A stretch of DNA of 59,535 nucleotides, the filler included, from Dugesia japonica (taxonomy: Eukaryota): assembly GCA_001938525.1 (NCBI GenBank). It is 5 parts of 5 records of this genome, joined end to end, with 100 filler letters (N's around TTAATTAATTAA, not from the genome) between each part and the next. Parts side by side here need not be neighbours in the genome. Positions count along the whole stretch, not along the records: positions 10,717 to 23,646 come from MQRL01583279.1; 4 more parts are not named here. One strand, 5' to 3'. The stretch's first letter is position 1; the number at the start of each line of letters is the position of its first letter. Shown here one piece after another: positions 10,717 through 50,606 of this stretch. A model generated the notes under the pieces. That model did no database searches. It had not been told where the DNA came from and saw only the letters and a program-made list of their open reading frames with translations. The position numbers and the translations under genes are program-made.

Positions 10717-10933
10717 AGTTTATAAAATTGAAAAACTAAAATCATACCAAGAATAATTTTGTCAAATAAATTCCAATATTTAAATATTTAATCGATTTAA
10801 TATAAATCGATCGCATAAGATATTTGAGTAATAATTTGTAAAATTCCCTTCAAAAGGAAATCATTGGATTTATTTATTTACTAATGGATAAGTTGAATTT
10901 CAATAAAGTAAATACTATTCATTTAATACTTAC

Positions 10934-11486
10934 ATTGGAAATATCACATGAAGTGATTCTGTCATTAATCGAGACCAAATCGAAATTATAAAATTTTTTC
11001 ACATTTTCTGATAATAAATTGCTTAATGAGCCTTCACCACAACCCATATCAGCTACAATCAAGGATTTGACATGATCCAACGATTTAATTCGCGAACAAA
11101 TCCAATAAATTGGATCTTCAGGCCATTTTTCACGTTGATTTCCAAATCCTTTATGATAAATTTCAAACGCGTTAGGATCGTTTTTGAAAAACTCATATGC
11201 CTCTTTACTTGTCATCAACGATAACTTTTCATTTATAAAGCGGAATCTAAATAATTTTTAACAATTTAAATTTTTACATAAATATTAAATTTACTAACAA
11301 AGATGCATTCATGTCTTTAGATGGTTTCTGTTTGTTCTTTTTAACTAAATTCTTTTCCACATTATTTACATCATTTGTAGAAGTTTTATTGTTATACTTC
11401 TTTTTGTTACGCTTATTTTTGCAATTATTTTTGCTTTTATCATTTTTGTGAAGAATTTTTTCAATAATTGATAAATTAAAAGGCAT
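10934..11486 (-). CDS. RRP8: ribosomal RNA-processing protein 8 (nucleomethylin, SAM methyltransferase), exons 1-2, 3' truncated
   Basis: Exon 1 11486-11299, 52-nt GTTAGT..TAG intron 11298-11247, exon 2 11246-10934 ending at GTAAGT. Spliced product MNASLFRFINEKL..FEIYHKGFGNQREKWPEDP..VADMGCGEG..FDLVS matches RRP8 motifs; remaining exons not seen before the spacer. Confidence 0.9.
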
Positions 11487-12149
11487 TTCGCATAAAAAAC
11501 TTTAATATTAAAACAAATTTACTTTTAAAGTTGAGAATTTACAATTTACAATTATTTACAATTTTAAAATTTTATTAAGAATCGGTAAAAAAAACTATTT
11601 AAAACACAAAAACATTTTGTCAATTTTACTATGTAATAAATAACAAAAATATTATAATCAGCAGAAATTTATATTTTATAAAATAAATGAATTATTTTAA
11701 AAATTGAAAAAATATTTATTATTGATAAAATTTTTTGAGAAAAGAATGTATTTTTCATTCTAAATTATAATAGTTACAATATCCTTGTCATTTATCATAA
11801 TTGAACAATAACTAAATACTTCGAATATTTATTAAATATAAATTATAACGTTAATTCTTATTATTCAAACAACGTTATTTTAAATTTCTATGATTCTCCC
11901 CTCCATCAAAACATTTTCCATCTCTTTAGCTAATCTATTCCCCTGGTTTCCCAACCATTAAGAAACGTGATTCCTGCTTTATACAAACCTCACTATACTA
12001 ATTAATATTTTTAGACATCATTTATTTCACAATTACAACACATGTTTAGTAAGATAATTATACTAGAAATAGCACTGGTTACATATTAAAATGGAATTAG
12101 ATCACTTTCTATTAGCTAAAACTATTAAATAATAATTATTTCTTTATAT

Positions 12150-12452
12150 CACGATATTTAAGAAACTTCTAAGTTTTTCTACATTTCTTTCCAATAGCTG
12201 CCCATTTCCTTTTATACTGTCTTTCATGAATTTTCTCAATCATTCGATAAGGTCCTTCAAATCTGTCTTGACTTTTATTTCTTATTTCTATCTTGATGAG
12301 TACAAAATCGTTCAATTTGAATTTTCTGTTAGTAATCACATCTGAAGTATTTTCTTTAATTCTATCTAAAACGTCTGACTCATACCATTTTTCTCTGCTA
12401 ATTTTCTTTCCAAATACGATCTCAGCTGGGCTCTTTCCAATCGTCTTCTGTT
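12150..12452 (-). pseudogene. Ty3/Gypsy-type integrase C-terminal remnant
   Basis: TIGKSPAEIVFG...RFEGPYRMIEK (GPY/F motif); truncated upstream. Confidence 0.8.
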
Positions 12453-13660
12453 TCCATGGCAACCATATCGAAACCGTGACCAGTACCGTTTCTATGGCAG
12501 CCGAACGAGATATGGATTTTCTGATTTTGGGCCGTAACTAAGGGCAATGGTGCGCGGAAAATGTTATTGCGAAATGTCTATCCAAGATAGCCGTATCTAT
12601 GGCAACCAAAAATTTTTAATAATTTTTTTAGATTTTTGAAAATTTTAAAATATGAGAAAATTAACAAAACTATTTTGAGTCTGATGATAATTTTTTTAAA
12701 TTTTTCTAGAGAATACCGATAAAGATATCACGTTCCAAAGTTTTTGTCCTCGCGTTCTCCTATCTTTTTAGGTGACTTAACGTATATTTTTTTAAGAAAT
12801 TATTTTTTCTAATGAAATATGGATTTTTTCTGACCTAGGTTACCAAGAATGAGATGGTTGGCATGGTAACGTGCAAAGATATTTTTTTATAGATTTTCCT
12901 CCACAATTAACAGAAGTAAAGTTGCGCTGATTGCTGAACTATTTAAACCTTTTGTTCAAGCGACCAGATCACCTGATAATATGTCATAAAAATTTTTTTT
13001 GAATATGTTAAAAATGTTTTTAACAAAACGTTAAAACCATAGATATTCAAGAAAAACAAGGCAATTTTGGTGAGAATGATGAAGGAACATGGATACCTGA
13101 TGATAAAGTAGAAGACGTTATAAGGAGAATACGCCATCTTTTGAGTCATGCTGGAGTATAAAAGGTATCAGCGTACATGAAGCATAATTATAACGCGAAA
13201 CATTTGTAGAGCTAAGTACAAGAGGTTGTTCAAAAATGTGTTGGGGTTTTATCTAAGAGTTGACATAATCTTGGGTAGTTGAACTAATCAAACCTCTCGA
13301 AGAATTTAATCTGGTGTCCCAAAAATTCAGATCTTCGGAATGGAGCCGTTGACTTGAAATATGAGTACAGACTCGCACTCCTTTGGTTCAAGTTCGTTTC
13401 ACATGATACTCGCCTGATTTAAATCCTACTTATTAATCATTAATTTATTCGATTTTCAGTTTTTAACGGTTTTTATCGAATTCTTATTATCAGTCATTTG
13501 AGCCCTAAATCATTTTTAAAAAAATTTCTTTTTTAAATTATGCATATTTAGCTGAGTTCATTTAATTACTACTTTAATATAAAAATCAATACCTTAAGTT
13601 TTAAAGCTATCAAGAACACAAAGTTTTGACAAGTGAAAAATATATTCGATTATCCAAATC
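12453..13660. mobile_element. unclassified repeat/TE remnant with repeated CATGGCAAC-like motifs
   Basis: Abuts the integrase remnant; ccatggcaacc, ctatggcagcc, ctatggcaacc, gcatggtaac at about 12455, 12493, 12597, 12860; no ORF homology. Confidence 0.35.
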
Positions 13661-14029
13661 ATCACTTGTGTTGGGGCGAAACACCCCGAGGAACAATAAT
13701 CCGAGTTAAAAGGGGTCACAAATGACCAGTACCAAATTAAANNNNNNNNNNNNNNNNNNNNNNNNNNNNNNNNNNNNNNNNNNNNNNNNNNNNNNNNNNN
13801 NNNNNNNNNNNNNNNNNNNNNNNNNNNNNNNNNNNNNNNNNNNNNNNNNNNNNNNNNNNNNNCAAATGAAGAAATAAATGCAAGAAAATAATAATTAATT
13901 TAAACGGAAAAATTAATTAAAATTGAGGTAAAATCTATTTTTGGTAAATAATTCCGGTCAGGAAAGTCGGTGAGAATCCGGTGAAGAAAATTCATGAAGA
14001 GAACAGCAAGGGGCAATAGGATTTATCAG

Positions 14030-14290
14030 TAAGAAAAACTTACCATCTTCCAGAGGGTTGGTACAGGGTCCACAAGATCGGAGCAATAGGAGGCCTAAAA
14101 AATAAAAATAATACAAAGAAAAAACCATCACCTGGTTCTCTAAAAATAGTGGCTAATCAGAGTTCTAAAACTCTGAAAAAATTTTGGAATCGTGGCACCA
14201 AATCCAATAAGATCCAATTAATCCAAACTAAAAATAACTGGCCAATGCCAGACAAGTTGGGGTGTTTCAGGAATCGTATAAAAGGACCCC
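14030..14290 (+). promoter_or_regulatory. putative Pol II promoter in left arm of element A
   Basis: CCAAT at 14205, 14214, 14242; TATAAAAG at 14277; block similar to 50065-50305 and the reverse complement of 18181-18370. Confidence 0.55.
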
Positions 14291-14611
14291 CGGTTTTAGC
14301 AGAAAAAACACATTAATTTCAAGTTAATTCAAGTCAATAACGCACAAAAAAAAGAGATAATCAAAACCCTCAACAAATTTCTAATTGTTACGCAGAAGAA
14401 AAAGTTTAACCACAAATTTGTCTATCATCATCGAGAAGTTACGATTATATCAGTTATCGCGCAGCGGTCAATCACTATACCCTAAACAGTAATTTATTAT
14501 TTCAGAATTGCAAATTAACCAACGAATTATTTTGAACAGTTAAAGTNAAAGTTAATTCGGAAAGCCATCACTAAGCTCACAAACGTTAAGGACCAGAATT
14601 AACCGTTGCAG

Positions 14612-14643
14612 AAATCTCCGAAATTTTTATCCCAAAGAAATAA
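14612..14643 (+). other. putative non-coding leader micro-exon (element A)
   Basis: ttaaccgttgcAG|aaatctcc...aaataA|GTaaag; same accgttgcagaaat context as 50580. Confidence 0.45.
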
Positions 14644-14884
14644 GTAAAGTTTAATTTTAATTATGTGTAATGTGAATTATGATTATTATAATAAACAGGT
14701 CGGGTGAACAACTAATTTTCTTTTTTATAAAAAAAATAATAAATATTCTAAAATCAAAAACCTAATCATGAAAAAATTAGGGTATCAAATTGATGGATAA
14801 ATAATATGTTTTTATAAATCATTGATAGTAATTACATAATTGTGATAAGTGTATATTAAAAATAAATTCAAAGCAAAATCTTTT

Positions 14885-15430
14885 TATTTAAAAATAATCG
14901 ACTATTCTATCGGTGACATCAAAGGAAAATTGTTTCACTAACCTCTCAATACATAACACACCGCAGTGAGCAATACCCCCTGTTCCGTTAAGTTGTTTGT
15001 CCACTAGTTTCCGAACGTGTTACAATCTTCTGATATGATAAAAATTCACGAGAATAATTCCACACAGATAATTGTTAAANNNNNNNNNNNNNNNNNNNNN
15101 NNNNNNNATCCACTATGTGGCAGCAGCATGGAAATTCTGAAAGGCACCAGTTGTAAATTGCCAATATCAGTATATAGTTCAAATCTCCGTTGTGTATAGA
15201 CATTAAATAATAGACATCACTCGTTTGCCACCATATTAATTCACGATACAAGATAAGTATGTGATAGTTCTGTTGGCTGTACCGTCGATTCAATCACTGA
15301 TTCATTAATGCAGACTAAATACACTGACACACCTACTTGGAAGATGTACACCCCAGGTGGCAAATTAATATATTATGTCACACTGTTGTCAAGGAGAAAG
15401 TTCGCCAAGTGACAACGACGCGTGTAAATT
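14885..15430 (-). pseudogene. degenerate minus-strand cassette, unknown protein
   Basis: Minus frame NLPPGVYIFQVGVSVYLVCINES...; after the gap KLVDKQLNGTGGIAHCGVLCIERLVKQFSFDVTDRIVDYF* followed by AATAAA; contains stops. Confidence 0.35.
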
Positions 15431-15884
15431 TTAAACTAGATTAAATTTTAATTTTACTAATTTAATTATTTATCTATGGTATCGACCTTGTTAGTGGCAC
15501 TACTATTTATTGTCACTGATAAGATTATTATGATTTTCTATTGCACACAATTTCTGTTACGACAATTATTTTGAGTTATGGCCACTACTATTATTAAGGA
15601 CGTTAATCAAGTTTATTAATCTGTACCCCGTACTAACATTTGTATTATAACGTCACCTCTCATTACCATGTTCATTCTTTTTGACTAACAACCATCTAAT
15701 ATTGGTGTTTTTAATGATTCGTATGGGGAACAGCGGCCCCGGATTGCAAATCTAACCACGTTGCACTCGTTTTGAAAGTAAGGGAAATAACTTCCCCATG
15801 ATATTATCTAACTATACTGGCGATGGCGGTTTTTCGTAATGGACTAAATCGTGGGGATGATTAATAAAATATGTTATTTAGCTC

Positions 15885-16067
15885 ATGCCCAACGAATTGT
15901 ACCGAGTTATGCGAGAGATAAAACAACCAAGAAAAGTTGATCGTCGAAAACAGCTAGTCGCTCATATCCTAACCCGCGGGAAAGTAGAATATCCGGATGA
16001 AACGGACTTGTGCTGTTTTGCCGAGATGTTTCCCATGGACGGGAAGGTAGATATAGACGAGGGGTGA
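15885..16067 (+). CDS. small conserved cassette protein 1 (60 aa), unknown function
   Basis: Acceptor tttAG at 15881, AATAAA 16116; homologous to 54625-54810 (KQL.AH.L.RG..E.PDETDL.CFA.MFP...KVDIDE). Confidence 0.75.
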   Translation: MPNELYRVMREIKQPRKVDRRKQLVAHILTRGKVEYPDETDLCCFAEMFPMDGKVDIDEG

Positions 16068-16205
16068 TTCGTTTCTTTGGTTTCAGGGATTGTCGCGTAT
16101 TTAAGTGTGATCAGCAATAAAGTGACTTATGCTCCACTTTTAACTCACTTATGTCATCTTAATATTATATTATTGAAATTTTACTAGCCTTATCTTAATC
16201 TTAGG

Positions 16206-16562
16206 ATGGATTCGATATGGATACGCGTCGTCGATAGTAGGACCCGGCGACCAATACTCCGTCGTTATTACAATCCACATAACCGGGATGCGGGTATTTT
16301 GACAGATCGGTCAAACTTACCACCGGTCGAATCAATCGTTGGCCGCATTAATGATTTCGGAGAACGGCAAGGATATCAGACATGGACAGGCCCAAATCGC
16401 ACCGTCGCGACCTCGTTTTCATATCAGCCTACCACCCCTCCCCCAGCTCCGGCGATACAAGCTTTCATCGCTAATCTCCTATGGGGAGTCCGGGATCCGA
16501 ATGGGGTAACGGATATTGATAATACCGCCCCCAACTCCGACAATACTATTAATCCATCTTGA
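16206..16562 (+). CDS. small conserved cassette protein 2 (118 aa), unknown function
   Basis: Acceptor ttAG at 16204, AATAAA 16584; homologous to 54937-55349 (MD..W....D.RT.R.I...Y..P..R.AG.L.D; LW..R; N.AP.S). Confidence 0.7.
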   Translation: MDSIWIRVVDSRTRRPILRRYYNPHNRDAGILTDRSNLPPVESIVGRINDFGERQGYQTWTGPNRTVATSFSYQPTTPPPAPAIQAFIANLLWGVRDPNGVTDIDNTAPNSDNTINPS

Positions 16563-16825
16563 TTTTTTGTTGTTTTGTTTAGTAATAAATAAGTGTTTTT
16601 ATTCTCGGCTACTTTCTAACTTTTCGTGTGGTTAAGCGTATTGAGAAGAGGATTTAATATTGATTTTTTTATAGAATTTCCTCGTAAAATCATAAAGTAA
16701 TATTTATACCTAGAGGGTTCTTTTCAATTTTCATTTAATAATATGGGTAATCATACTAATTTTATGTTTCTCGTCTCAGCCAATATCAGACAAAGTGTAA
16801 TACCTTAGATGTACTTTTATTTCAG

Positions 16826-17169
16826 TGCATTCGTCCTTAAATAAATCCCAGGCGCCAAATAAGAAATTACGAGAGGATAGTGAGGATATGGAACTCACTT
16901 GGGATCTTTATAAACTGGTTAAAAGGCGTTGGGAAGCCGAGGCTAAGGTGAAACGATTTCGACGGAAATGTTTGACCTTTAAAGCAGAGATGGATGCCAC
17001 CCAGAATCAAGAGCGGGTGTGGAAGTCTCAGTGGGAGATCTTTACCAACATTATCAAGTCCTATCAAGAACGGGAAAACCAGTTGTTAGATAATATAGTG
17101 AAGTTGAGGGCCGCTATCCCATTGACACCTCTCATGATCGATAAAGGAACCCAAACTGGTCGTTCTTGA
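16826..17169 (+). CDS. basic coiled-coil cassette protein 3 with C-terminal KGTQT motif; ATG probably formed by splicing (A|TG)
   Basis: ttcAG|TGCAT; AATAAA 17198; strong amino-acid similarity to 55537-55839. Confidence 0.72.
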
Positions 17170-17270
17170 GTTATCTTATCCACTTTGTTATTACTCTAAT
17201 AAATAATTAAACTTCTGTTTATTTCTTCAGAATTGGGTTTTGACCACTTAATTATAATTCTTTATTTTAG

Positions 17271-17620
17271 TGCCAAGAATCACCTTCCCAACGAGTTTGA
17301 AAAAGTGCCATAGAATTATGCGCCGCCTACTGGTCAAACGTCATCTAAAACGTAAGGCAGATAGGGCCATCCTCAAGCATCTAGCCAAGCGTGACCAACT
17401 TATAAAAAAGTTAGATTTGGTCGTAAGGATACAAACGGATCTGGCGACCCAAACCAAAGCCCTTGAGGCAGAAAATAAACAAATACTGTTGAGAAAGATA
17501 GAGTTTCTCAAACAGTATATCGCCGACCTCTCCCGTCNGATAAACAACCCCACAACATTGCAATGGGATGATAACGACGATATTGTCGCATTCAACTTCT
17601 CCGTGTCCGACCCAGACTAA
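17271..17620 (+). CDS. basic coiled-coil cassette protein 4; ATG probably formed by splicing
   Basis: ttttAG|TGCCA; open frame of about 116 aa with heptad pattern and acidic tail; AATAAA 17667. Confidence 0.6.
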
Positions 17621-17694
17621 TGGCTAGATCCAGGAGCACTGGATTTACTCTAAACATGTTGCTCTTAATAAAATAATTTTAATCAGAGTTGTAA

Positions 17695-18177
17695 TTTATT
17701 TCTCTTGGATAATAATGGGGCAAAATATTGAACCCACAATTAAAGGTTTATAGGTGCGTACCTTCTATTAAGAGTAAGGTCAACCGCCATAAACTGAAAA
17801 CCTACCACAGGGACGGTAGGGTAAATTCTTGAAAGGGTTCCCCTGAGGGTTGTTTTTTCCCCAGCCACTTTTGCTTGTGACTCAACTCAGGTGGGACCCC
17901 AATACTTGTTATACATAAATTAATAATTAGGAAAAATAACAACACTAACATGATCTGGATACAGATTTGGAGCAAGCACAAGAGCATAACATCCTTCCCA
18001 TTCGTCCAAAAGTGACTCCAAAGTTTCTCCATAATAATGAGTCCTAGTAATCCAATCGGAAATCGTTGCACCATGGATTAACGAGTAAAAATAATCACCT
18101 TTTTTGATAATAGAATTTTTTCCGGTCAAACTCGATATTTGTCTGGTTAAAAGTGTTATTTTTAGTGAAATTTTCAT
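17695..18177 (-). pseudogene. minus-strand unit of element A, unknown (overlapping ORFs 17802-18074 and 17920-18177)
   Basis: Lies immediately downstream of minus-strand TATAAATA; minus-strand AATAAA at 17695-17700 converges with the plus-strand poly(A) signal. Confidence 0.35.
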
Positions 18178-18180
18178 GGG

Positions 18181-18370
18181 TATTTATACCGGTTTCTCTT
18201 CACACCCTCATTCTGTTCATTGGTTATTTGGAGTCGTATGATTTTTCTGACGTTTTCATTGGCTTGAACGTCATATGAGTTCTTTTTATTGGTTGATGTT
18301 TTTAGATTTTGAATCTATTGGACAACCTTCAAACCCTTGTATCATTTTCCTGAGACTCGTAACGATTTTT
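18181..18370 (-). promoter_or_regulatory. putative Pol II promoter in right arm of element A
   Basis: Minus-strand TATAAATA 18188-18181 with four upstream CCAAT; reverse complement aligns with 50065-50120 (aaaatc-ttac..caagg.tttgaag.tt..ccaata). Confidence 0.55.
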
Positions 18371-18978
18371 TAACTTAGATTTTCAAGATCTCTGATTTTT
18401 TCATGACCAGAACTTTTTTAACTGCTAATATTTTCACCATGGGAAGTTGTCGTATTTGGCATTTTTCATGAACTAATTAATTTTCTTTTAAAAAATAATT
18501 TATTTTAAATTGTTCGAATTATTTTATTTAAATNNNNNNNNNNNNNNNNNNNNNNNNNNNNNNNNNNNNNNNNNNNNNNNNNNNNNNNNNNNNNNNNNNN
18601 NNNNNNNNNNNNNNNNNNNNNNNNNNNNNNNNNNNNNNNNNNNNNNNNNNNNNNNNNNNNNNNNNNNNNNNNNNNCATTTTCTTGATTTTGCCCAATGAA
18701 ATAATGGTTATTCATTATCTTTCTTTGTCCTGCTACAACTTCTATTACTACTTTTCTTCTTTGGTCTGTTCTTTTCTGAGTGGTTTCTTGTTGTAAATTT
18801 TGGGTTTTGTTGATTATTTCGTTGGTTTTAAATACCAATCTCGGCTTTCCTTTTAATTATTTCCTTCTTTCACTGAACTATATTCCTCTTAGGTCTGAAT
18901 GCTTCGCTTTCTTTTTTGACGACAATTTTTTAACTTGTCACCATTTTTATTTTCGGTATCCGGTGTTTCACCCCAACA

Positions 18979-19785
18979 GTTGTATAACTTCCCAGAAAGC
19001 TAAAGTGTTGACAACAAAAACGAAAGAAGAAACAAAAAAAACGCAGCCAGCTAAAATATTTGAACTGTGATTTATAGATGTGTGGGGACCACTGTCGGAG
19101 ACAAGAAGTTGATAATAATATTTTCTCGGTATAATATACCAATGTTATAAGTATGTAGCCTTGATAGCAATGACAAAACAAGATGAAGATATCATATGGA
19201 AAGCAATATTGGAGAAGTGGATATTAAAGTTCGGGTGTCGGAGAGAAATTATAGTATATTGTGGAAGAGCATTTAAATCTAAATCAATCAAAATTTTTGC
19301 AGCTGATCATGGAATTACTCTCAGGTTTTTTAGTTCATATCATCATAACACAAATGAGCAAATCAAGAGGCAGTTTAGAACTATGCAGGATATGATTAAT
19401 GCAACTCTTAAAGAAAAGAAAACCTTTGATTGGGCGGATGTATTGCCAGAGATAGAATTTACTTTGAATGCTACAAATTAGAAAACTATCGGAAAAAGCC
19501 CTGTTGAAATCGTATTTGGGAAGAGAATAAGCAGAGAAAAATAGTATGAAACCAATACTTAAAGAGTGCACAAAGAACAAGAGGAAGAAATATTAACCAA
19601 AAGACAATTCGAGATCGGTGATAAGTTCTTAGTAAAAGATGAAACAAGAACCAAAATCGTTATAAAAAACCCTATAATATCAAGAAGAAGATTCATGACA
19701 GACGTAACATCCTGGAAGATAAGAACGGAAAAAGTCTCGAAAGAAATGTAGAGAAGATCAAAAAATTCTTAAAATGAGTGATGCG
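18979..19785 (+). pseudogene. Ty3/Gypsy integrase remnant
   Basis: CITSQKAK (zinc-finger end), FID.CGPL, SSYHHNTNEQIKRQFRT, LPEIEFTLNAT, TIGKSPVEIVFG; several stops. Confidence 0.82.
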
Positions 19786-20606
19786 AGTTGAAATTTTGTG
19801 CTTTGATTGGGAATTATTTTTTTAAAATCTCTTATTTAAAAATTGAAAGTCACAAATTAATCAAGAAATTAAAATAAAGTTTTGTTACGAAAATTATGTG
19901 TAGTTAAAGATTAATCCCAATATATTTTATACAGAAATATTTAAATTTTCAAATTTTTAAAATTAAAAATTTAATATTTAAGTAATGAATGATGTTTTAT
20001 TTTAAAATTTTGTAAAAGTTTTAAATGAAATTTCGATAACAGATAATTATCTTAAAATTTCGAAGTATTTTTAATAAAGTTTGAATTAAAAATTTTAAAT
20101 TTATTAGAAAGTAATTTCCAATTGAAGCATAGNTTTTAATTTGTTTGATTAAACAAATAATGAAGTTTGTAAGTTTTTATTTTGAAATAAATTATTTAGA
20201 GTTGAAATTTGATGTTGATTATCCGAATTCTCAAAACTGATCTAACATTTCCCATTGCCATAATAACGAAATTACGAAATATTAGAACCCATAAATTGAG
20301 AGATGAGTGTATATAAAGTGACTACCAATTCAATAAAATTTACAATAATGTACATCGTTACAAATCTAACTTGATAAAAAATGCTAATTCAAATAAAAGA
20401 TTACCAACAGGAATAAAATTTCACAAATAATAAATACAAATATTATAACAAAATGAACTTTCAATAATGTTTTATCACACACGTAATAGTTAATTTAAAC
20501 TCAAAATTCTACTCCAAGCCTTCAAAAAAAAAATTATCGCCACTGTAAATTATTCCAAAAATTAATAAAATTAAGTTTTTTAAAAATTCAACTTTATTAA
20601 TCTTTT

Positions 20607-21860
20607 CTCACATCCACCCCTTTCAAGAAAATTTTGAATTTTTTCTGTATTTCTCTAAATCTTCTTCCCTCTTCTATCTTGAAATCAGTGACTTTTTTCA
20701 TGTAATTTCTTTACCACAAATTCGCTACAAATTTACTCTTGTTTTTATCTCCTCTTTCTTATTTCACCAAAACCGATTGAAATTTACCTCTTGTATGATT
20801 CTTCTCATTACTTATTCTCTGCTCTTCCAACACTCTTTTGTACCAACATTCCATGCTAATAGATCTGACTAACATAAATTCTACTGGACTCTTTTCGGTT
20901 GGCTTTTGAACCATCGAAAATTCTACCTCTAACAGATATGCCACACAATTAGTTGTACCCATTTTTTTAATCGAAGTATTGATCCATTCTATTATCGTTC
21001 TAAATTGCTTTCTGATCTGTCCTTAAGAATAATGATGACATGAGTTATCGCTTTGTGATCTGTTCTCAATCTAAAATTTTCCCATACAAATAGTGTTTCA
21101 ACTGGATACAGAAATAATTTATCGGATCTAACATTTATTGAGTCTCCTTTCTTGACTATTCTATAAATCATCAAATATGTTCGTCTCAAATCCCAATTTG
21201 ACACCATAAATAAATAATACATACATATTCCTGTCGCTTAAATATCTCTTCCGATTATTTTAATTTTCGAAATGTTTTGTCCGTATCACCCATTCCCATC
21301 TATCGACCTTACTTCAACATCTCTCCAAACTTTGCTGCTATATTATTTATCAACTCCCCATCGTCTTGTTGCTCATTTTTAACAATTTCTCTAGGCAATT
21401 GAAATCCAAAACTATTTTGAAAATCTATTCCCATATATTTTCTACTTCTACCTGTGGCCCACTCGTCAACACAAACAGCCATGCAGTCTCACTGTCAATC
21501 GAGAATCTTTTTTTGTTAATATACACTTTTCCGAAGACCCTATCTTTATTCTCTCATCTCTGCACGCCTTGAAGAGTCTTTTCATACCCGAATGTTTTTT
21601 AAATCTGGCTACGGTCAACTCCTTTCTTGGTAAAGCCCTCCAATTTGAGTATTTGATTTAACTCCACAATCCATTACTTCTTCCCCAAACTGGTCCCCTT
21701 GTGTTAAAATAATTGTATTATTACTATTTTTCTTCGTAGATGTACTCAATTCTCCTCAGATACCCTAAAAATTGATTGAATGTTCTAGTTTTTGATTTAT
21801 GGGAGATCAAACGACTCTAAAACTAACTCTCTTTGGTTTTGATTCCATGATTCTCGCCTT
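20607..21860 (-). pseudogene. Ty3/Gypsy gag-pol remnant with PPT
   Basis: FRLRTDHKAIT (RNase H), KSPVEF (integrase C-terminus), polypurine gaaaggggtgga followed by TG near 20612. Confidence 0.65.
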
Positions 21861-23584
21861 TTTTTGAATTGTGTAGTAAATAACTATGCCTATGATACTC
21901 TATCCCACAAACTTTCTTTTAGGAAGATAATTGTCGAAAATCTAACAAAATAAAAAACTCATCTTTTGACCGAGGATTTTAATTTAATAAAATCTCAAAT
22001 ACGATTAATGGTTAAGTTCAAAAACTTATCTCGCAATAATTGTAATTGTAATACTATTTTTATGTTGCGAAATTTTATTTGATAAATACAAATCAATGGT
22101 TAACAAAGGAATATAATTGAGAACGATGTTAATCATTTTAAAGATTCGTTTCACATACAAGTATCCGCAACCCAAAATTAGCCAGAGAAAATCATTAAAA
22201 ATTCTATAATTGTGCTCCCAAGAACATCTATGGAAATATATTCAAAGAAAACTTGGCCAATAAAATATTATGCCTAATGAAAAATCAGACTTCTTTTGAG
22301 TAACAAAATATTCTATTTTCATGAGTTTAATATTTAATAGTATGGAAGTATTAAACTTTATTACACAATTTCTGTTTAAAAAAAAGTTAAAAATAATCTC
22401 AATTCGGAAGGAAAAAAATTTGTACTTAAAGACAGAAGCATTGTGACCCACGTTAGAAAACTGAGTACCAAGAAGTTAAACATACTCTGTTTGAATATTA
22501 TGAACTCAGACCAAAGAAGAATGTCAAACATTACATAGAATTTATGGTAAAGATGTAATTGATGACTAGATAACAAGCCTCTAAAAAATATAATTAAAAC
22601 AAACCGTAACTTATAAACCATAAATATTCAAAAGATATAATAAAGCGCTGATTTTTTAAACCAAAATAAATTATTATAAAGTTTGAAAAGAAATAATGAA
22701 CGACTTCTTCCTTACAAATCCATTAACAAAATAAACATTTCACAATATAAAAACCTTGCAAATTTTTCATCAACTTCAAGTTTTAATTAATTGTTTAATA
22801 ACTGCTAATATAAACGAAACAGTCATTTTTCGTATTTTAATGTTTAAAAAATTAATTTTCAAAACAAAAGAGTGATAACAAATCATTTCTAATGCACCAA
22901 AAATGTATTTAACTTCACCAAATACGTATTGAGAATGACACGAAAACAAGCTGGTACACATTTGGAAAAAATTATTTGAAAAAAGAAATAACCACATATT
23001 ACACTTTGATAATTATTAAATTTGTAAATTTTAACAACTTCAAAAAGTTAACAACCATGTGCCGATAAAATAATTTATATATAAATATAGTATTGCAATT
23101 TTAAAATCGTTTAATTATAATGCTGTCAAATTTGATGTTTTGGAGGTGACTGAGGCCACTTATTCAACAAATCTTTGTCACCACACCATTTTTCAAGAAA
23201 ATATTTAAAATGAATAACCTGTGTATCACAAAGAGAAAAGTAATTTCGACTATTGAAAAAATAAATTTAATAGAATATGTTGAAAGTATATAAAAGAACC
23301 CATTAAAAATAACAAAAAATATAACAGTAATAAGATTATAACCACCATTAAATGGTCAACATTGCACCAGAATAACAAAATAACAAAAGACGATTTTGGA
23401 AACCATTTCACTGTATGTAATAATTTTCTGAGCTATTTTACATGAAAAATTACTGAAAAAATGGCACGTCACAAAAATCAATATCACAAATTCTAGACAA
23501 TGAGAAAATACAAATAATATAGTAATATAACATTTTCACCATTTTCCATTGAATAATACTAATAATATCAATAAAATAATAACT

Positions 23585-23585
<1 letters not shown>

Positions 23586-23646
<61 letters not shown>

Positions 23647-50589: not shown

Positions 50590-50606
50590 AAATTCAAATT
50601 TACTCA
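50590..50606 (+). other. putative leader micro-exon (element B, plus strand)
   Basis: ctcaccgttgcAG|aaattcaaatttactcA|GTAAGT. Confidence 0.55.

What the first reader, a model, noticed from the sequence alone, without database searches (positions are those of the whole stretch)
14601..17672. Shared leader micro-exon spliced to alternative terminal cassettes, with split start codon A|TG
Seen: each cassette has a pyrimidine-rich AG acceptor 0-3 nt before its start and its own AATAAA. Four cassettes (16826+, 17271+, 55537+, 51442-) begin with TG immediately after AG, and 16826 and 55537 are conserved from that first codon (MHSS). Three candidate micro-exons (14612-14643, 50590-50606, 53152-53117) all end in A before GT. 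Inference: the leader donates the A of ATG, so one promoter yields many proteins by alternative 3' splice and poly(A) choice, analogous to the adenovirus major late unit. Trans-splicing is an alternative explanation.
Basis: partly seen in the sequence, partly recalled or inferred. Interest (0 to 1): 0.9.

Follow-up and report, generated by a model that had tools for sequence, protein, structure and literature searches.

The report
Small gene cassettes with spliced-on start codon
A 2-kb run of four small genes of unknown function each starts right at a splice acceptor, and two of them (plus relatives in an unrelated environmental contig) lack the first base of their start codon, so an upstream spliced exon most likely supplies it.

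Summary
At 15880-17672 (+) four co-oriented small ORFs (60, 118, 114, 116 codons) each carry a pyrimidine-rich AG 0-3 nt before the start and AATAAA 22-49 nt after the stop. ORF3 and ORF4 read AG|TG. The one relative found (a 512-nt ENA metagenome contig, L001) keeps the gene order ORF2-like then ORF3-like. Both of its cassettes start AG|TG. Its xTG aligns with ORF2's ATG. The conserved N-termini lie upstream of any in-frame ATG and show synonymous changes, so translation must start at the junction codon. The best explanation is a 5' exon ending in A spliced onto each cassette. A better candidate (TATA-like, initiator-like, donor A|GTAAGG; exon 15674-15777) lies on the cassettes' own contig, but I defined that pattern post hoc. 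Trans-splicing is not excluded, though all spliced leaders in the papers consulted end in G, which would give GUG. No protein has a known family, fold or viral relative. The organism is unknown and no RNA data were available.

The parts
15643..15677 (+). Candidate core promoter: TATA-like 15643-15650 and initiator-like TCATTC 15672-15677 (A at 15674)
   Evidence: Read. It is the only TATA + initiator + A|GTRAG combination on either strand of the piece (about 0.07 expected per strand). The pattern was defined after seeing it, so this is inference.
15674..15777 (+). Candidate shared leader exon ending in A before GTAAGG, on the same contig as the cassettes. It contains a 13-codon upstream ORF at 15714-15755.
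   Evidence: The donor has one mismatch to GTAAGT. Inference only; no RNA evidence.
15880..16121 (+). Cassette 1: AG 15880-15881, ORF1 15885-16067 (60 aa, own ATG), AATAAA 16116-16121
   Evidence: Its pyrimidine tract is weaker (0.50) than in the other three cassettes.
16203..16589 (+). Cassette 2: AG 16203-16204, ORF2 16206-16562 (118 aa, own ATG 1 nt after the AG), AATAAA 16584-16589
   Evidence: Homologue P0002: 43% identity, E 1.6e-9. Of 38 identical alignment columns, 23 use different codons, counting the ATG/GTG start column.
16824..17203 (+). Cassette 3: AG 16824-16825 followed directly by TG 16826; ORF3 to 17169 (114 codons counting the junction codon; first in-frame ATG is codon 22); AATAAA 17198-17203
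   Evidence: The model is a helical hairpin, pLDDT 69.5.
17269..17672 (+). Cassette 4: AG 17269-17270 followed directly by TG 17271; ORF4 to 17620 (116 codons; first in-frame ATG is codon 16; one unread base at 17538); AATAAA 17667-17672
14612..14643 (+).
   Evidence: One search confirms the letters. One search shows five better A|GT donors nearby. It lies on a different contig from the cassettes.
15080..15107 (.).
   Evidence: no overlap or shared 10-mer between the flanks. Continuity is not demonstrable. The gap was not filled.
18164..18278 (+). Possible fifth cassette: T-rich tract, AG|TG at 18164-18167, 37-aa hydrophobic ORF to 18278, no AATAAA after it
   Evidence: Weak; listed for completeness.

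Best explanation
The segment from about 15640 to 17672 (+) is a compact expression unit of four small, lineage-restricted protein genes. Each is built as a 3'-terminal cassette: a branch-point-like TAA/TAG about 20 nt upstream, a pyrimidine tract, AG, the ORF, then AATAAA.

A 5' exon whose last base is A is spliced onto the AG of each cassette. For cassettes 1 and 2 the exon only adds a 5' UTR, because their own ATG follows 3 or 1 nt later. For cassettes 3 and 4, and for both cassettes of the relative L001, the exon's final A joins the TG to make the AUG. These proteins can then only be made from the spliced RNA.

The donor exon is most likely a shared leader transcribed from a promoter at the head of the unit. 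My candidate is exon 15674-15777, downstream of a TATA-like and an initiator-like motif. Choice of acceptor together with the next poly(A) signal would then select which protein is made.

Shown: the signals, their non-random placement, protein-level conservation starting at the junction codon, and conserved gene order in a second organism.

Inferred: that splicing occurs, that the donated base is A, that the leader is cis and shared, and which exon it is.
For: - Signals and their statistics.
- All six acceptors (four in the window, two in L001) align with an invariant TA about 20 nt upstream plus T..AG.
- L001 keeps the order ORF2-like, AATAAA, about 100 nt, then ORF3-like. Both start AG|TG.
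- ORF2's ATG aligns with L001's xTG with no gap up to W5.
- The conserved N-termini lie upstream of any in-frame ATG. In-frame stops lie 4-12 codons upstream of the junction codons with no ATG between. Synonymous changes show constraint at the protein level.
- GC3 is 0.45-0.52 in the four ORFs against spacer GC of 0.22-0.31, which fits real coding sequence.
- The candidate leader is the only TATA + initiator + A|GTRAG combination in the piece. It sits 104 nt before the first acceptor, on the same strand and the same contig.
- Spliced leaders tabulated in the literature end in G, which would not make AUG (PMC3795323; copepod spliced leaders).
Against: - There are no RNA data of any kind.
- Only one relative was found. 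It is 512 nt long, and its 75 nt upstream of the first cassette show no leader.
- The candidate leader was recognised post hoc. It carries two upstream AUGs (one 13-codon uORF), which would lower initiation at the junction.
- The genomic junction codon also reads GTG, so GUG initiation, with or without a G-ending spliced leader, is not excluded.
- The source organism is unknown, so whether it trans-splices is unknown.
- The claim of other copies in the same genome could not be checked.
Confidence: 0.55

Rival explanations
1. The four genes form an operon-like polycistron resolved by spliced-leader trans-splicing. The host's SL RNA, not a local exon, is joined to each AG. The junction codon becomes AUG if that spliced leader ends in A, or GUG if it ends in G like the described ones.
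For: - Co-oriented genes, each with a pyrimidine-rich AG within 0-3 nt of the start, as in trans-splicing organisms with very short 5' UTRs.
- The distance from the end of AATAAA to the next acceptor is 83, 236 and 67 nt, and about 93 nt in L001. This resembles nematode-type intercistronic spacing (general knowledge; PMC7668243 for the operon type).
- The neighbouring RRP8-like gene has introns of about 50 nt in AT-rich DNA, as in several trans-splicing phyla.
Against: - All 30 consensus spliced leaders from seven phyla end in G (TTG, ATG, AAG or GAG; PMC3795323). The copepod spliced-leader-like sequences listed there also end in G. So AUG would not be formed.
- A flatworm-type leader ending in AUG is out of frame. 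Read that way, the frame stops after 4 sense codons (ORF3) and 9 (ORF4).
- No SL RNA or other Rfam family is present in the piece at E<=1.
- The RRP8-like gene shows no strong acceptor before its ATG.
Confidence: 0.25
2. One reading: the micro-exon 14612-14643 is the shared leader that donates the A.
For: It is bounded by AG and by A|GT and lies upstream on the same strand.
Against: - Its donor GTAAAG has two mismatches to GTAAGT, and five better A|GT sites lie in the same 3 kb.
- It starts at an acceptor, so it needs a further, unidentified first exon.
- It lies on a different contig across gap 15080-15107, and linkage cannot be shown.
- It lies in A-rich, ORF-free DNA with no likeness to the unit.
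Confidence: 0.07
3. There is no splicing. Each small gene has its own promoter, and translation starts at the genomic GTG or, in the window, at the internal ATGs. On this view the AG and the pyrimidine tract are incidental.
For: - The junction codon reads GTG in all four AG|TG cases.
- ORF3 and ORF4 do have internal in-frame ATGs.
Against: - The internal-ATG option fails for L001. Its first ATG is codon 38, after the conserved block.
- It also leaves ORF3's conserved codons 2-16 untranslated.
- The GUG context is poor: T at -3 in ORF3, ORF4 and L001.
- The acceptor-like tract is also present before the two cassettes that have a normal ATG. Its placement is far from chance.
- Bacterial-type promoter and terminator scans are at background.
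Confidence: 0.1

Closest known systems
Adenovirus major late transcription unit
   Same: The proposed layout matches: one promoter, a 5' leader spliced to alternative downstream bodies, and several poly(A) signals that pair with the choice of acceptor.
   Different: There the leader is non-coding and each body has its own AUG. Here two of four bodies lack the A. The unit is about 2 kb with ORFs of 60-118 codons. No protein shows any likeness to a viral protein. This is not a member, only a parallel in layout.
Flatworm spliced leader whose 3'-terminal AUG serves as initiator (described in PMC9851317, which cites the 2006 work)
   Same: A 5' exon added by splicing supplies the start codon for ORFs that lack one.
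   Different: The whole AUG is donated, in trans, genome-wide. Here only one base is needed, and an AUG-ending leader would be out of frame.
Nematode-type operons resolved by spliced-leader trans-splicing (PMC7668243)
   Same: Co-oriented genes; AAUAAA, then a spacer of about 70-240 nt, then a pyrimidine-rich AG immediately before the next start codon.
   Different: The spliced leaders in the papers consulted end in G (PMC3795323), so they would give GUG, not AUG. No SL RNA gene was found in the piece. The organism is unknown.
Accessory co-oriented ORFs of giant retroelements of bdelloid rotifers (Terminons; PMC6431247)
   Same: Several small co-oriented ORFs, some predicted helical or coiled-coil, of unknown function, in AT-rich invertebrate-like DNA.
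   Different: No reverse transcriptase, hammerhead ribozyme or telomeric repeat array is present in the piece. The primary paper was not available, so its splicing details could not be compared.

Membership tests
Shared-leader unit with alternative 3' splice and poly(A) choice (adenovirus-late-like layout) | One promoter and leader exon upstream of all bodies | tested here: inconclusive
   One candidate exists: TATA-like 15643, initiator-like 15672, donor after 15777. It is the only such combination in the piece. It was defined post hoc and has no RNA support.
Shared-leader unit with alternative 3' splice and poly(A) choice (adenovirus-late-like layout) | Several alternative 3' splice sites, each heading an ORF | tested here: met
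   At sequence level only: four acceptors 0-3 nt before the starts, three of them in the top 5% for pyrimidine content.
Shared-leader unit with alternative 3' splice and poly(A) choice (adenovirus-late-like layout) | A poly(A) signal after each body | tested here: met
   AATAAA lies 22-49 nt after all four stops, P about 6e-4. This is motif-level evidence only.
Adenovirus or any known virus (homology) | Proteins related to viral proteins | tested here: not met
   No match in Pfam, PDB sequences, PHROGs or BFVD folds (best E 3.1). IMG/VR scans found nothing.
Spliced-leader trans-spliced operon | Pyrimidine-rich AG acceptor just upstream of each cistron, and a short spacer after the upstream AAUAAA | tested here: met
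   spacers of 83, 236 and 67 nt, and about 93 nt in L001.
Spliced-leader trans-spliced operon | An SL RNA in the organism whose leader is found on these mRNAs | not testable with these tools
   The organism is unknown and there are no transcript data. No SL RNA family is present in the piece.
Spliced-leader trans-spliced operon | A leader 3' end able to complete AUG with the TG | tested here: not met
   Checked against described leaders only: all 30 consensus leaders end in G (PMC3795323). An undescribed leader ending in A is not excluded.
Flatworm-type leader-donated AUG | The leader's terminal AUG is in frame with the ORF after the acceptor | tested here: not met
   The frame that starts at the T after the AG stops after 4 (ORF3), 9 (ORF4) and 8 (L001 ORF2-like) sense codons.
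Terminon/Athena giant retroelement | Athena reverse transcriptase, 3' hammerhead ribozyme, adjacent telomeric repeats | tested here: not met
   No RT domain, no ribozyme, and only scattered single hexamers with no arrays. The piece is short, so absence from the whole locus is not shown.

The most novel reading that the evidence does not exclude
A lineage-restricted, possibly mobile, 2-kb multi-gene unit has its own leader exon ending in A. That exon is spliced to several terminal cassettes and completes their start codons. Translation of these proteins would then depend strictly on splicing. The arrangement has been kept between two organisms whose proteins are only about 40% identical. This would be a virus-like expression strategy in genes with no known viral or cellular relatives. 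A variant reading is a so far undescribed spliced leader that ends in A.
Probability: 0.4. Interest if true: 0.75.

Novelty: new variant of a known kind. Interest (0 to 1): 0.6.

Why it matters
Start codons completed by a spliced-on exon are known as a whole-AUG donation by flatworm spliced leaders. Four full-text searches of the held library for split or leader-completed start codons turned up no natural gene family built around a split A|UG.

If transcripts confirm it, this unit gives a small, tractable example of obligatory coupling between splicing and translation initiation. It would also be a warning for annotation. Gene finders would either miss these genes, call them from GTG as happened for L001, or truncate them at internal ATGs.

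It would also define a new orphan gene family of four linked small proteins. ORF3 is predicted to be a helical hairpin, and ORF2 has an arginine-rich N-terminus. Their codon composition differs sharply from the neighbouring host gene, which raises the question of a mobile or foreign origin.

Tried and rejected
**Homology searches**
- Word-index protein searches with ORF3, ORF2 and the ORF2+P0002 profile found nothing new.
- The exhaustive HMMER search with ORF2 gave one true relative, P0002. It also gave one spurious multi-stretch hit to a 2549-aa immunoglobulin-repeat protein, P0001, which I disregarded.
- Exact look-ups of ORF1, ORF2 and ORF3 found no other contig.
- IMG/VR scans with ORF1-4 and the profile found nothing.
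- The JGI metagenome scan with the profile found nothing.

**My mistake**
- My own DNA pattern for the ORF3-family start had 20 N instead of 19, so it was out of register.
- Its five metagenome hits, L002-L006, are chance matches, and the last metagenome scan was wasted.
- The corrected pattern found nothing in IMG/VR. In prokaryotic genomes it found one chance hit inside a bacterial gene.

**Structure and families**
- The ORF2 model was too poor to use (pLDDT 46.5).
- The ORF3 helical hairpin matched no viral fold.
- Rfam and tRNA scans were empty.
- ORF3 and ORF4 are not paralogues.

**Ideas rejected**
- A large inverted repeat around the unit is only N runs plus a 70-nt match between two integrase remnants.
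- The Terminon idea has no RT, ribozyme or telomeric repeats, and the primary paper is not held.
- A bacterial or organellar origin with true GTG starts is not supported, since promoter and terminator scans are at background.

**Not achieved or not done**
- The organism could not be identified. The RRP8-like gene is cut by the piece edge.
The junction codon was reasoned from coordinates only.

- None was entered into a tool or used as evidence. The statement on leader 3' ends rests on PMC3795323.
- The short generic signal consensuses used in scripts (AATAAA, GTAAGT, TATA, initiator TCAKTY) come from general knowledge.
Full report
**Material**

The usable piece is 10717-23646. It is AT-rich (GC 0.18-0.43 per 500 nt). 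It is a scaffold of four contigs separated by N runs at 13742-13862, 15080-15107 and 18534-18675, with single unread bases at 14547, 17538 and 20133.

The finding's gap (15080-15107) was tested first.
- The flanks share no overlap and no 10-mer.
- The only ORFs that cross the gap are short, of ordinary length for this DNA (57-73 codons with the unread stretch counted), and have no homology.
- Continuity therefore cannot be shown.

**The observation**

Four co-oriented ORFs lie in a GC-richer island: 15885-16067 (60 aa), 16206-16562 (118 aa), 16825-17169 (114 codons) and 17270-17620 (116 codons).
- Each is preceded by a T/C-rich tract and AG. The AG lies 3 nt and 1 nt before the ATG for ORF1 and ORF2. 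For ORF3 and ORF4 it is directly followed by TG (16826, 17271).
- The acceptors of ORF2-4 have 11 of 14 pyrimidines, which is the top 5% of 536 AG sites. Such sites occur at 4.6 per kb.
- AATAAA follows the four stops at 49, 22, 29 and 47 nt. The chance of AATAAA within 50 nt of an island position is about 0.16, so about 6e-4 for all four.
- AG is followed by TG at 5.6% of AG sites.
- A scan of both strands for acceptor + start + ORF of at least 40 codons + nearby AATAAA returns only these cassettes.
- Aligned, the acceptor regions share an invariant TA about 20 nt upstream, where a branch point would be expected.
- The described signals are therefore real and not chance.

**Are the ORFs genes, and where does translation start?**

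Nothing matched in Pfam, PDB sequences or PHROGs. Word-based protein searches were also empty.

The exhaustive HMMER search with ORF2 found one true relative, P0002 (94 aa, 43% identity, E 1.6e-9). It is encoded on a 512-nt contig of ENA metagenome assembly ERZ27272684 (L001).

L001 is decisive in three ways.
1. Its ORF2-like gene begins with a T-rich tract, CAG, then TG. The gene caller used the GTG. This codon aligns without gaps with ORF2's ATG.
2. Its first in-frame ATG is codon 38, after the best-conserved block. A stop lies 4 codons upstream of the junction codon. Of the 17 identical residues before codon 38, 9 use different codons. Over the whole alignment, 23 of 38 identical columns use different codons. 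The N-terminus is therefore under protein-level constraint and can only be translated from the junction codon.
3. After its stop come AATAAA, about 90 nt of spacer, and then another T-rich AG|TG followed by the same first residues as window ORF3. Of codons 2-16, 7 of 15 are identical, 6 of them through synonymous codons. These codons lie upstream of ORF3's first ATG (codon 22).

Gene order and the AG|TG junction are thus conserved between two organisms whose proteins are only about 40% identical. In all four AG|TG cases there is an in-frame stop 4-12 codons upstream and no ATG in between.

**Mechanism**

The same acceptor architecture precedes the cassettes that have a normal ATG, so it is a general feature of the unit and not a by-product of a GTG start. 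The simplest reading is that a 5' exon is spliced to each AG. Because ATG in one species corresponds to xTG in the other, the donated base is most likely A.

Two sources are possible, a local shared leader or a trans-spliced leader.
- The compilation in PMC3795323 states that all consensus leaders of seven phyla end in TTG, ATG, AAG or GAG. The copepod leader-like sequences listed there also end in G.
- A G-ending leader would give GUG.
- A flatworm-type AUG-ending leader is out of frame.
- This favours a unit-specific cis leader, or an undescribed leader ending in A.

**Which leader?**

One of these, after 15777 (A|GTAAGG), lies on the cassettes' own contig, 104 nt before the first acceptor and at the start of the GC-richer island. 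Upstream of it are a TATA-like motif (15643-15650) and an initiator-like TCATTC (15672-15677) at canonical spacing.

This three-part combination occurs once in the whole piece on either strand, against about 0.07 expected per strand. I defined the pattern after seeing the site, so this is a lead, not a test.

The candidate exon (15674-15777) contains a 13-codon upstream ORF, which is a point against efficient initiation at the junction. I did not build or search any joined leader-plus-cassette sequence.

**What the proteins are**

- Function is unknown.
- ORF3 is predicted as a helical hairpin (helices 13-58 and 63-97, pLDDT 69.5) with no viral fold match.
- The ORF2 model is unusable (pLDDT 46.5). 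Its N-terminus is arginine-rich.
- ORF3 and ORF4 are not detectably related to each other.
- The ORFs have GC3 of 0.45-0.52. The neighbouring RRP8-like exons have 0.26-0.27 and the integrase remnants 0.30-0.34. The spacers have GC of 0.22-0.31. L001 shows the same contrast.
- This fits either strong codon bias or a mobile or foreign origin. There is no positive evidence for a virus.

**Surroundings**

- An RRP8-type methyltransferase gene (PF05148, 1e-25) lies at 10717-11486 (-). It has introns of about 50 nt and is cut by the piece edge.
- Two decayed integrase-like remnants in opposite orientation flank the region. They are 12169-12537 (-) and 19119-19751 (+), with a weak rve match and a 70-nt, 84% inverted match.
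- The large inverted repeat is otherwise N against N.
- No tRNA, Rfam family, telomeric array or bacterial-type signal was found.

**Comparison with known systems**

The layout works like a shared-leader, multi-acceptor, multi-poly(A) unit, the adenovirus late unit being the textbook case. It also resembles a trans-spliced operon. The donation of start-codon information by a 5' exon resembles the flatworm leader AUG (PMC9851317). It is a member of none of these by any homology test. The split of the codon itself, conserved across species and across several cassettes, is the distinguishing feature.

- One metagenome scan was wasted on a mis-counted pattern.
- They were not used.

**Verdict**

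The split-start-codon inference is supported by comparative evidence. The specific micro-exon is not supported. The cis-versus-trans question remains open.

Noticed in passing
window 10717-11486 (-): A host-like RRP8-type methyltransferase gene (PF05148, E 1e-25 for the exon 10919-11218). It has a lysine-rich first exon from ATG 11486 and introns of about 50 nt, and it is cut off by the piece edge. Its GC3 (0.26-0.27) is far below that of the cassettes.
   Followed up: partly
window 12169-12537 (-) and 19119-19751 (+): Two decayed integrase-like ORF remnants in opposite orientation on either side of the unit. They have a weak rve match (E 0.004) and a 70-nt, 84% inverted match at 12380-12449 / 19480-19549. 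They lie on other contigs of the scaffold.
   Followed up: partly
window 18164-18278 (+): Another T-rich AG|TG followed by a 37-aa hydrophobic ORF, about 500 nt after the last cassette but with no AATAAA after it. It could be a fifth, decayed or differently terminated cassette.
   Followed up: no
window 17801-17820: A perfect 8-bp-stem palindrome (4 G-C pairs, 4-nt loop) about 130 nt after the last poly(A) signal, inside a 550-nt stretch (17621-18216, GC 0.36) that belongs to the GC-richer island but has no convincing ORF.
   Followed up: no
window 15714-15755 (+): A 13-codon upstream ORF with two in-frame ATGs inside the candidate leader exon. It ends 22 nt before the exon's last base.
   Followed up: no
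window 20759-21755 (-): Several adjacent 47-88-codon open frames on the minus strand with no Pfam match. They may be further decayed mobile-element coding sequence.
   Followed up: partly
window 13863-14716 (+): Strongly A-rich contig (AT skew up to +0.33) with open frames at 14020-14316 and 14300-14485 that have no family match.
   Followed up: partly
window 23590-23646: An (AAT)n microsatellite runs into the end of the piece.
   Followed up: no
L001 1-75: The 75 nt upstream of the first cassette of the metagenome relative contain ATTAAA at 39 and a TATA-like string, but no donor site and no likeness to window ORF1. The contig is too short to show what precedes the cluster.
   Followed up: partly
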